A stretch of 64,000 bases of DNA from Selaginella moellendorffii (GCF_000143415.4 NW_003314349.1:629172-693171); one strand, 5' to 3'; shown: positions 61,430 to 61,714, counted from the stretch's first letter. A program made the numbers and translations. Notes: generated by a model from the letters alone, not told the origin.

Positions 61430-61435
61430 TATAAA
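61430..61435 (+). promoter_or_regulatory. TATA box of the small peptide gene (conserved at 62700-62705 in its paralogue)
   Basis: AGCTATAAAGACGAGC is present upstream of both ATGs (61517 and 62768). Confidence 0.7.
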
Positions 61436-61516
61436 GACGAGCCCCTCCTGCCTCACAGATCAAACCATTTCTCTCTAATATACAAGCCTACTTGATCTTA
61501 GTCTGAGCAGCAAATC

Positions 61517-61714
61517 ATGGAGAACAAGGCTTTCTTGGTGATGTTTTTGGCGCTTGCCATGTTTGTGATGATGCTGGCCATGGGCGTGGACGTGGGAGGA
61601 ATCGCAAAGGCTGCTGCCCAGCGCTGCCAGTCGGGGTGGTATTGGTATGACAACAGTTGCCACCGTTGCCAGAGGGGTTGGGTCTGGCGCAACAATCGCT
61701 GCTGGCGCAACTGA
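61517..61714 (+). CDS. Small secreted Cys/Trp/Arg-rich peptide, 65 aa, unknown family
   Basis: Signal peptide MENKAFLVMFLALAMFVMMLAMG, short pro-segment ending AAA, then two 14-aa repeats CQSGWYWYDNSCHR / CQRGWVWRNNRCWR. TATA box, ATG context AAATCATGG, and local paralogues. Confidence 0.8.
   Translation: MENKAFLVMFLALAMFVMMLAMGVDVGGIAKAAAQRCQSGWYWYDNSCHRCQRGWVWRNNRCWRN

What the first reader, a model, noticed from the sequence alone, without database searches (positions are those of the whole stretch)
61430..61714. Candidate new family of secreted Trp/Cys/Arg tandem-hairpin peptides
Seen: an intact 65-aa ORF with TATA box, signal peptide and short pro-segment, and a predicted 31-aa mature region QRCQSGWYWYDNSCHRCQRGWVWRNNRCWRN. 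It consists of two 14-aa repeats of C-Q-x-G-W-x-W-x-x-N-x-C-[HW]-R (4 Cys, 5 Trp, 6 Arg, one acidic residue). Established: the C-x10-C-x2-C-x10-C spacing does not fit defensins, thionins, LTPs, snakins, heveins, RALFs or alpha-hairpinins; single-disulfide Trp/Arg beta-hairpins are known animal antimicrobial scaffolds (arenicin-like). Inference: two disulfide-closed hairpins, with a possible pyroglutamate after AAA|Q cleavage, acting as a cationic antimicrobial or glycan-binding defence peptide. The WxW/YxY cores could alternatively be cross-linked RiPP cores.
Basis: partly seen in the sequence, partly recalled or inferred. Interest (0 to 1): 0.78.

Follow-up and report, generated by a model that had tools for sequence, protein, structure and literature searches.

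The report
Spikemoss secreted double tryptophan-hairpin peptide gene
This is an intact but unannotated spikemoss (Selaginella moellendorffii) gene for a tiny, positively charged, secretion-type peptide made of two tryptophan-rich, disulfide-closed hairpins, flanked by two broken copies; the family is undescribed, its building block is a known kind of cysteine-rich module, and its job (probably defence or surface binding) is untested.

Summary
ORF 61517-61714(+) encodes 65 aa: a hydrophobic signal-like N-terminus, a conserved VDVGGIA-K-AAA segment, and 31 residues with two 14-aa C-x2-G-W-x-W-x4-C-x2 repeats. The TATA box and Kozak context are as described.

New here:
- **Decayed copies.** Two paralogues lie 0.4 and 1.25 kb downstream, so this is a small birth-and-death cluster.
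- **Public relative.** The only plant one is the first 52 residues of S. moellendorffii XP_024531936.1, where the same signal and first hairpin are joined to a pectinesterase. This is probably a chimeric gene model.
- **Fold.** AlphaFold2 gives four strands (pLDDT 86). The first Cys of each unit lies outside the ribbon. Each unit therefore looks like a single-disulfide beta-finger (TNFR A1, EGFR/furin-like C1, C-type-lectin N-terminal hairpin) rather than an arenicin-type stapled hairpin.
- **Prokaryotic look-alike.** A similar GWYWYD..CH motif occurs in surface proteins of a Nealsonbacteria MAG and of unidentified metagenome organisms.

No named family matches, and no paper searched holds the motif.

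The exact protein is absent from public collections.

The scan has already reported this family at eight or more other loci of the same genome.

Function is inferred only. The RiPP reading has no support.

The parts
61292..61516 (+). Promoter and 5' leader of the intact gene. TATAAAG lies at 61430-61436. The leader ends ...AGCAGCAAATC before the ATG.
   Evidence: sequence. Blocks 61298-61326, 61410-61442 and 61496-61525 are 83-93% identical to copy C at a spacing of about 1.25-1.3 kb. A role as promoter is inferred from position and conservation only.
61517..61714 (+). Intact 65-codon ORF plus TGA stop: the pre-peptide of the Trp/Cys hairpin-repeat family.
   Evidence: Homologous to the N-terminus of XP_024531936.1 (P0002): library E 5.7e-8, pairwise E 2e-16 with 27 of 46 identical.
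61517..61618 (+). Signal-peptide-like region (MENK plus a hydrophobic core at residues 5-22) and the conserved VDVGGIAKAAA segment. The cleavage site is undetermined.
   Evidence: Hydropathy. AF2 helix over residues 2-23 and lower confidence over 21-40. VDVGGIA is conserved in copy C and in P0002.
61625..61666 (+). Hairpin unit 1 (residues 37-50, C-x10-C-x2).
   Evidence: AF2 strands at precursor residues 41-44 and 47-50, with a D-N turn.
61667..61708 (+). Hairpin unit 2 (residues 51-64, C-x10-C-x2).
   Evidence: AF2 strands at precursor residues 55-58 and 61-64, with an N-N turn.
61800..61859 (+). Candidate polyadenylation signals (AATAAA at 61800-61805, 61850-61855 and 61854-61859).
   Evidence: Read directly. 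Function is inferred; no RNA data.
62003..62127 (+). Copy B, a 5'-truncated and frameshifted relic of the mature-peptide region. AKAMAQRCQ, WYGYD and SCHRCQRGWRSNGSRC-stop lie in three different frames. It has no signal region and no promoter homology.
   Evidence: tblastn hits at 62003-62032, 62058-62072 and 62074-62127. DNA alignments. D5 repeat.
62596..62903 (+). Copy C, a decayed paralogue that keeps the promoter, TATA box (62691), leader and ATG (62768). It has one extra base after codon 3 (frameshift), has lost the AKAAAQRCQ stretch, carries an in-frame TAG (62874-62876) at a Trp position, and retains only one hairpin-like remnant.
   Evidence: The signal region is 74 of 82 nt identical to copy A. 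Codon differences are 1 synonymous to 6 non-synonymous.

Best explanation
The ORF is an intact member of a Selaginella moellendorffii-specific, publicly unannotated family of small secreted cysteine-rich peptides built from a 14-residue C-x2-G-W-x-W-x4-C-x2 unit. Proposed mechanism (inferred step by step). (1) The hydrophobic N-terminus directs the pre-peptide into the ER, where it is cleaved somewhere between G23 and A34. (2) Each unit closes its own disulfide (C37-C48 and C51-C62). The result is two stacked 'beta-finger' modules: an N-terminal arm pinned by the disulfide over a two-stranded Trp-rich ribbon with a D-N or N-N turn. (3) The rigid, +5-charged mini-protein displays Trp/Tyr/Arg faces and acts outside the cell by binding microbial or cell-wall surfaces (anionic membranes and/or polysaccharides). 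It is therefore most likely a defence peptide. The locus is a small tandem birth-and-death cluster with one live gene and two dead copies, which is typical of fast-evolving defence-type peptide families.
For: Shown: the ORF, the TATA box, a good start context, the hydrophobic core and a significant internal repeat. Shown: the Cys, Gly and Trp positions and the VDVGGIA..AAAQ segment are conserved in S. moellendorffii XP_024531936.1 while residues between them vary. Shown: two paralogous relics on the same strand, one of them with a conserved promoter and leader. Predicted: four strands forming two hairpins, at pLDDT 86 with a shallow alignment and 83-85 over this region from the single sequence. 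The best structural superpositions all fall on tandem disulfide beta-hairpin modules of extracellular cysteine-rich domains: mGluR CRD (rmsd 1.8-2.0 A over 31 residues), UL144/TNFR-like, CD40/TNFR1, R-spondin Fu1-Fu2, Elapor1, and C-type-lectin N-terminal hairpins (rmsd 1.0 A over 14-15 residues). Composition is +5, 5 Trp and 2 Tyr in 31 residues. Leads only, not verified here: scan notes report the same family as strongly transcribed at other loci of this genome.
Against: The exact protein is absent from a collection of about 15 billion proteins. The word search found nothing. Both neighbouring copies are dead, so this copy may also be drifting. All fold matches are below significance (Foldseek E >= 2.7; VIA Z <= 2.3), as expected for 31 residues but not proof. 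Disulfide pairing was deduced from the strand register and from analogy, not read from coordinates. The modules it resembles are protein- or ligand-binding scaffolds, not membrane-lytic peptides, so 'antimicrobial' is only one of several possible extracellular roles.
Confidence: 0.6

Rival explanations
1. This is a silent or dying copy. The ORF belongs to the family but is not expressed or no longer under selection at this locus. It is simply the last copy of a three-copy cluster that has not yet acquired a disabling mutation.
For: Both neighbours are pseudogenes. The exact protein is not in any public protein set. No expression data could be obtained. A versus C differs by 1 synonymous and 6 non-synonymous codons in the signal region, consistent with relaxed constraint in at least one lineage.
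Against: All structural positions are intact in both units (4 Cys, both Gly, all W-x-W). The start context, TATA box and stop are intact. Three of the eight residues conserved between the two units use different synonymous codons, which suggests the residues have been retained over time.
Confidence: 0.15
2. It is a cell-wall or glycan-binding module rather than an antimicrobial. The Trp/Tyr faces bind plant or microbial polysaccharide, as the W-x-W strand of hevein-type domains does. The family can serve as a targeting module for wall enzymes.
For: In XP_024531936.1 the same signal and first hairpin are joined through an Asp-rich linker to a pectinesterase domain. The prokaryotic GWYWYD..CH look-alikes sit in cell-surface proteins with Ig-like, PKD or FISUMP domains. 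The metagenomic double-hairpin protein P0005 has a weak Peritrophin-A (CBM_14) hit at E 0.0096, below the cut-off.
Against: The pectinesterase model looks defective: the Pfam match is split and part of the domain is missing. It may be a prediction chimera. There is no significant match to any carbohydrate-binding family. No binding data exist.
Confidence: 0.15
3. It is a signalling ligand: a cysteine-rich peptide recognised by a receptor kinase, as EPF, LURE, RALF and SCR are in other plants. It would act in development or reproduction rather than defence.
For: Secreted cysteine-rich peptides of this size are often ligands (established knowledge). The fold look-alikes (TNFR, R-spondin furin repeats, mGluR CRD) are protein-protein interaction modules.
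Against: There is no homology to any known ligand family. Tandem amplification with rapid decay and a variable number of units (scan notes; unverified) fits defence-type families better. No receptor evidence exists.
Confidence: 0.07
4. It is a RiPP precursor whose WxW/YxY cores are cross-linked by a maturase.
For: Only the presence of repeated aromatic motifs supports it.
Against: Known plant Trp/Tyr macrocyclisation uses a BURP domain fused to or partnered with the core (established knowledge). The ORF has no such domain. None of the ten large ORFs scanned in the window is a BURP or other RiPP enzyme. The conserved Cys pairs and the confident beta-hairpin prediction explain the repeat without cross-links.
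Confidence: 0.03

Closest known systems
Selaginella Trp/Cys hairpin-repeat peptide genes at other loci (scan notes s1-431098, s1-380472, s1-363786 and others) and the N-terminus of RefSeq XP_024531936.1
   Same: The signal peptide with VDVGGIA..AAAQ, the same C-x2-G-W-x-W-x4-C-x2 unit, tandem clusters with decayed copies, and absence from protein annotation. For XP_024531936.1 this was tested here: 59% identity over 46 residues.
   Different: This locus has only one live two-unit gene. XP_024531936.1 continues into a pectinesterase instead of a second hairpin.
Single-disulfide beta-finger modules of extracellular cysteine-rich domains: TNFR A1 module (Naismith & Sprang classification, as cited in PMC3412742), EGFR/IGF-1R/furin-like C1 module, mGluR cysteine-rich domain
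   Same: Units of about 14-16 residues. One disulfide links a leading arm to the second strand of a two-stranded ribbon. A Gly-aromatic pair follows the first Cys. Units are strung head to tail (C-x2-C junction). These are the best superpositions found.
   Different: There is no significant sequence match to PF00020, PF00757 or PF15913. Here the units stand alone as a 31-residue peptide rather than within a large receptor ectodomain. The units are unusually Trp/Arg-rich. The fold scores are not significant (Z <= 2.3).
N-terminal hairpin of long-form C-type lectin-like domains (for example 6a7t, 1iod, 8qmd)
   Same: Identical C-x10-C spacing and C-x-S-G-W...S-C-[YH] wording: the query's CQSGWYWYDNSCH against CQSGWEWFGGSCY in the lectin. 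Rmsd is 1.0 A over 14-15 residues at 40-43% identity.
   Different: Only the hairpin is shared; the rest of the lectin domain is absent. The sequence E-value is 0.15, not significant.
Disulfide-cyclised beta-hairpin antimicrobial peptides (arenicin, tachyplesin, protegrin; in plants only Ib-AMP and RCB-1 according to PMC13001179)
   Same: Short, cationic, Trp/Arg/Cys-rich, secreted and beta-hairpin based.
   Different: Those are single hairpins with cross-strand disulfides. Here there are two tandem hairpins, with the first Cys outside the ribbon. The Cys pattern differs from Ib-AMP (CC-x8-C-x3-C). The precursor is a simple pre-peptide, not a multi-core or BRICHOS precursor. Activity is untested.
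GWYWYD..CH motif of surface proteins from a Candidatus Nealsonbacteria MAG (P0003/L001) and from unidentified metagenome organisms (P0005-P0007, L003)
   Same: Ten consecutive identical residues (GWYWYDNSCH) are shared with P0006; the chance expectation in the library is 8e-5. P0005 also has a C-x2-C junction and a second G-[YW]-V-W hairpin (library E 4e-5; pairwise E 4e-13).
   Different: The spacing is C-x11-C (and C-x12-C) rather than C-x10-C. The units are embedded in large Ig/PKD/FISUMP surface proteins or anchored by a C-terminal membrane helix. Their context is acidic, not basic. Homology versus convergence is unresolved.
Hevein-type chitin-binding domains
   Same: A W-x-W pair on one beta-strand face of a small disulfide-rich secreted plant peptide (from established knowledge of hevein).
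   Different: Hevein has eight Cys and a 30-43-residue knot. There is no Pfam match. No binding data exist.

Membership tests
Selaginella Trp/Cys hairpin-repeat secreted peptides (unnamed) | N-terminal signal-type hydrophobic region followed by the VDVGGIA..AAAQ segment | tested here: met
   The segment is conserved in XP_024531936.1 and in copy C.
Selaginella Trp/Cys hairpin-repeat secreted peptides (unnamed) | Two or more 14-residue C-x2-G-W-x-W-x4-C-x2 units in tandem | tested here: met
   There are two units, 8 of 14 identical; 3 of 20000 shuffles reach this.
Selaginella Trp/Cys hairpin-repeat secreted peptides (unnamed) | Transcription of the gene | not testable with these tools
Scan notes claim transcription of paralogues elsewhere; this was not checked here.
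TNFR A1 / furin-like C1 beta-finger modules | A three-segment unit in which one disulfide links segment 1 to segment 3, and segments 2-3 form a beta-ribbon | tested here: inconclusive
   The AF2 strand register places the second Cys in strand 2 and the first Cys four residues before strand 1. The top superpositions are such modules, but at Z <= 2.3. Coordinates and S-S distances were not available.
TNFR A1 / furin-like C1 beta-finger modules | Match to the sequence profiles (TNFR_c6, Furin-like, GF_recep_IV, Furin-like_2) | tested here: not met
   A Pfam scan at E <= 10 lists only DUF4215 at E 0.58.
C-type lectin-like domain | A complete domain of about 120 residues beyond the N-terminal hairpin | tested here: not met
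   The ORF ends after 65 residues. Only the hairpin aligns, at E 0.15.
Arenicin/tachyplesin-type beta-hairpin antimicrobial peptides | A single hairpin whose two strands are bridged directly by cross-strand disulfide(s) | tested here: not met
   Two hairpins are predicted. In the predicted register the partner opposite the strand-2 Cys is a Trp, not a Cys.
Arenicin/tachyplesin-type beta-hairpin antimicrobial peptides | Antimicrobial, membrane-active function | not testable with these tools
   This needs synthesis and assays.
Ib-AMP (Impatiens) peptides | 20-mers with CC-x8-C-x3-C, released from a multi-core precursor with acidic spacers | tested here: not met
   The sequence shows C-x10-C-x2-C-x10-C with no spacers.
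BURP-type or other plant RiPP precursors | A core peptide fused to, or next to, a maturase domain (BURP), or flanked by AEP/protease recognition sites | tested here: not met
   There is no domain in the ORF and none among the ten large ORFs scanned in the window. Multi-exon genes in the window were not modelled.
Hevein / CBM18 and Peritrophin-A / CBM14 | Profile match and an 8- or 6-Cys pattern | tested here: not met
   There is no Pfam hit for the plant peptide. Only the metagenomic P0005 has a sub-threshold CBM_14 hit.

The most novel reading that the evidence does not exclude
The family is a new class of plant host-defence or adhesion peptide: free-standing tandem single-disulfide Trp 'beta-fingers'. 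If antimicrobial, it would be the first beta-hairpin-type defence peptide outside flowering plants and animals. Its unit would be the same adhesive module used on the cell surface of a candidate-phyla-radiation bacterium and of unidentified metagenome organisms (GWYWYD..CH), through shared ancestry, transfer or striking convergence.
Probability: 0.2. Interest if true: 0.7.

Novelty: new variant of a known kind. Interest (0 to 1): 0.45.

Why it matters
Lineage-specific secreted cysteine-rich peptides are a main source of new plant defence and signalling molecules, yet lycophytes are almost unexplored. A 2026 review counts only 25 natural beta-hairpin antimicrobial families, and only two of them are from plants, both flowering (PMC13001179). 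This family is missing from public protein annotation. The one public trace is probably a mis-joined pectinesterase model, so proteomic and comparative studies would overlook it. A 31-residue, two-disulfide, Trp-rich mini-protein is also easy to synthesise, which makes its fold, binding and activity directly testable. This particular locus adds a small satellite cluster, one live gene and two dead copies, to a family the scan has already met elsewhere in the genome.

Tried and rejected
- **Curated family scans.** The Pfam, NCBIfam and PDB-sequence scans of the precursor gave nothing significant.
- **Word-index search.** The protein search returned no candidate.
- **Exact-sequence look-up.** The protein is not in the collection.
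- **ESM Atlas.** There was no usable hit.
- **Full HMMER search of 1.84 billion representatives.** It gave six hits. P0001 and P0004 are low-complexity repeat proteins and were rejected as spurious.
- **The search for related loci with P0005 in metagenomes.** No confirmed locus was found.
- **The search of earlier findings by sequence.** The result was blank, as the operators had warned.
- **Literature.** No paper holds the motif strings. Searches on Selaginella cysteine-rich or small secreted peptides gave nothing on this family. The 1267-transcriptome cysteine-motif survey mentions Selaginellaceae only for a cyclotide-like hit.
- **Weak tblastn hit at 60743-60784.** It lies inside the PPR gene and was rejected as chance.
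- **Minus-strand ORFs at 62900-63675.** They have no Pfam match.
- **Arenicin-like cross-strand staple.** Rejected on the predicted strand register.
- **RiPP reading.** Rejected for lack of any maturase.

Full report
**1. What is in the sequence**

The ORF at 61517..61714(+) is intact and encodes 65 residues. TATAAAG begins at 61430, 87 nt before the ATG. The ATG has A at -3 and G at +4. AATAAA motifs lie 86-145 nt after the stop.

The N-terminus reads MENK followed by an 18-20-residue hydrophobic core (Kyte-Doolittle 9-mer means 2.4-3.0). AlphaFold2 folds this part as a helix over residues 2-23. The segment VDVGGIAKAAA follows, and then come 31 residues (window:61619-61711:+).

The two 14-residue units share 8 of 14 residues and 25 of 42 nt. 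Three of the conserved residues use different synonymous codons. Only 3 of 20000 composition-preserving shuffles reach 8/14.

The signal-peptidase site could not be predicted because no SignalP was available. Four sites between G23 and A34 satisfy the -3/-1 rule. The '31-mer', the 'pro-segment' and the pyroglutamate therefore stay as inferences.

**2. The surroundings**

The gene is not alone. Copy C (62596-62903, + strand) shares the upstream region, TATA box, leader, ATG and signal-peptide coding region with the intact gene. The signal region is 74 of 82 nt identical, and promoter blocks are 83-93% identical at about 1.25-1.3 kb spacing.

Copy C is broken in several ways:
- one extra base after codon 3
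- loss of the stretch encoding AKAAAQRCQ
- a TAG at a Trp position
- only one hairpin remnant left

Copy B (62003-62127) is a 5'-truncated relic of the mature region. Its recognisable pieces lie in three different reading frames.

The locus is thus a three-copy tandem cluster with one live gene. Upstream lies a PPR gene. Elsewhere the window holds ordinary plant genes: PPR, SNF2 helicase, RING finger and a sacsin-domain giant ORF. None of the ten large ORFs scanned is a peptide-maturation enzyme.

**3. Organism and relatives**

The word-index search found nothing. The exact protein is not in the collection of about 15 billion proteins, so the gene is unannotated.

Because the claim rests on absence of relatives, I ran the exhaustive HMMER search of 1.84 billion representatives. 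It returned six hits, of which two are low-complexity artefacts.

The one plant hit, P0002, is RefSeq XP_024531936.1, 'putative pectinesterase 11' of Selaginella moellendorffii. This identifies the genome independently of the scan's notes. Its first 52 residues are 59% identical to ours. They keep the VDVGGIA..AAAQ segment and every Cys, Gly and Trp of unit 1, plus the C-x2-C-x2-G start of unit 2. An Asp-rich linker and a pectinesterase domain then follow. The Pfam match to that domain is split and part of the domain appears to be missing. I therefore suspect a chimeric gene model, but I could not fetch the DNA to check.

The remaining hits are not from plants:
- P0003 comes from a Candidatus Nealsonbacteria MAG (L001). 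Its motif is CEEEGFYWYENKC and its variants, followed by His.
- P0006, and its 1041-residue relative on the metagenome contig L003, are large surface-type proteins with Ig-like/PKD domains and a C-terminal anchor. Their source organism was not identified.
- P0005 and P0007 are 83-85-residue, membrane-anchored metagenome proteins with a double hairpin.

P0005, P0006 and P0007 carry E-E-C-x3-G-W-Y-W-Y-D-x2-C-H (with Gly or Asp replacing the Asp or Asn in some copies). P0006 shares ten consecutive identical residues with our unit 1. Chance would produce that 8e-5 times in the whole library. The spacing differs, however (C-x11-C), and the context is acidic. Whether this reflects common descent, transfer or convergence on a very constrained hairpin is open.

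**4. Fold**

AlphaFold2 on the 31 residues with a four-row alignment gives mean pLDDT 86. The strands are at residues 7-10, 13-16, 21-24 and 27-30. The full precursor folded from the single sequence gives the same four strands, at pLDDT 83-85. The two-residue turns (D-N and N-N) fit tight hairpins.

In this register the second Cys of each unit sits in strand 2 opposite a Trp. The first Cys lies four residues before strand 1. The intra-unit disulfide therefore cannot be a cross-strand staple. It must pin the leading arm over the Trp face of the ribbon.

That is the architecture of three known modules:
- the one-disulfide A1 modules of TNF receptors (classification summarised in PMC3412742)
- the C1 'beta-finger' modules of EGFR/IGF-1R/furin-like regions (my own knowledge)
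- the N-terminal hairpin of long-form C-type lectin domains

The weak PDB sequence hits are exactly such lectin hairpins. They have the same C-x10-C spacing: CQSGWEWFGGSCY in the lectin against CQSGWYWYDNSCH in the query, at E 0.15.

Structure searches agree in kind but not in significance:
- Foldseek has no hit at E <= 1e-3. Its top rows are the mGluR cysteine-rich domain (TM 0.62-0.65, rmsd 1.7-2.0 A over 31 columns), R-spondin Fu1-Fu2, CD40/TNFR1, EphA2 and lectin hairpins (rmsd 1.0 A over 14-15).
- The Foldseek-independent search gives only Z 2.0-2.3, to UL144 (a TNFR-like protein), mGluR, the sweet-receptor CRD and Elapor1.
- The second-look alignment gives mGluR at Z 2.0-2.3.

I did not have coordinates, so the disulfide pairing is deduced, not measured.

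**5. Mechanism**

Shown:
- a secretory-type pre-peptide gene
- structural residues conserved across paralogues
- a confident double-hairpin prediction

Inferred:
- ER entry and cleavage
- the C37-C48 and C51-C62 disulfides
- a rigid, basic rod presenting Trp/Tyr/Arg
- action outside the cell by binding surfaces

I favour defence (binding microbial membranes or wall glycans) for three reasons: the charge and aromatic content, the tandem birth-and-death genomics, and analogy with cationic Trp/Arg/Cys peptides.

A plant-wall or glycan-binding role is the nearest rival. It is hinted at by the pectinesterase fusion and by the surface-protein context of the prokaryotic look-alikes. A receptor-ligand role is possible. 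A RiPP role has no support. This copy may also be silent.

**6. Comparison with what is known, and novelty**

No curated family covers the peptide. No paper in the library contains the motif strings. Searches on Selaginella peptides returned nothing relevant. A 2026 review lists 25 natural beta-hairpin antimicrobial families, with only Ib-AMP and RCB-1 from plants. The present pattern matches neither.

The unit itself, however, is a known kind of cysteine-rich module. Lineage-specific secreted cysteine-rich peptide families are common in plants. I therefore class it as a new variant of a known kind.

**7. Earlier scan notes**

The scan has reported the same family at eight or more other places in this genome. 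Those notes include clusters with six intact copies, members with 2-6 units, and claims of strong transcription, splicing and selection.

I could not reach those loci or their RNA evidence, so I use them only as leads. What I tested myself agrees with them:
- the organism
- the lack of annotation, and the one public trace, which I suspect (but could not check) is mis-annotated
- the cluster decay
- the double-hairpin prediction
- the known-module character

**8. Verdict**

This is a real and well-formed gene of an undescribed, spikemoss-specific secreted peptide family. Its structure is reasonably predicted. Its function and its expression at this locus are untested. Interest is moderate (0.45).

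Noticed in passing
P0002 (XP_024531936.1, S. moellendorffii), residues 1-353: The public gene model joins a hairpin-peptide signal and first unit, through an Asp-rich linker, to a pectinesterase domain. The Pfam match to that domain is split and part of the domain seems to be missing. It is either a chimeric prediction or a real recruitment of the hairpin as an N-terminal module of a wall enzyme.
   Followed up: partly
P0003/L001:3001-4239 (Candidatus Nealsonbacteria MAG); P0006 and L003:619-3744 (metagenome); P0005/P0007: A recurrent E-E-C-x3-G-[WF]-Y-W-Y-[DEN]-x2-C-H hairpin motif occurs in surface or membrane-anchored proteins of a candidate-phyla-radiation bacterium and of unidentified metagenome organisms. 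No Pfam or NCBIfam model covers it. P0006 shares ten identical consecutive residues with the plant peptide.
   Followed up: partly
window 59787-60900 (+): The PPR gene directly upstream reads as a 204-aa ORF and then continues with PPR-like sequence in other frames. It may be interrupted (introns, frameshifts or a pseudogene).
   Followed up: no
window 10965-16847 (-): A 1959-residue uninterrupted ORF has a strong Sacsin-domain match (E 1.5e-79). It is a very large single-exon gene.
   Followed up: no
window 20001-24000 and 28001-32000: There is an AT-rich island (GC 0.285, against about 0.48 for the whole window) at 20-24 kb. A stretch with strong negative GC skew (-0.26) and AT skew lies at 28-32 kb.
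   Followed up: no
window 5918-8713 (-), 9561-10805 (-), 37637-38818 (-), 48828-49943 (-): Four long ORFs (930, 413, 392 and 370 aa) have no Pfam match at E <= 1e-5.
   Followed up: no
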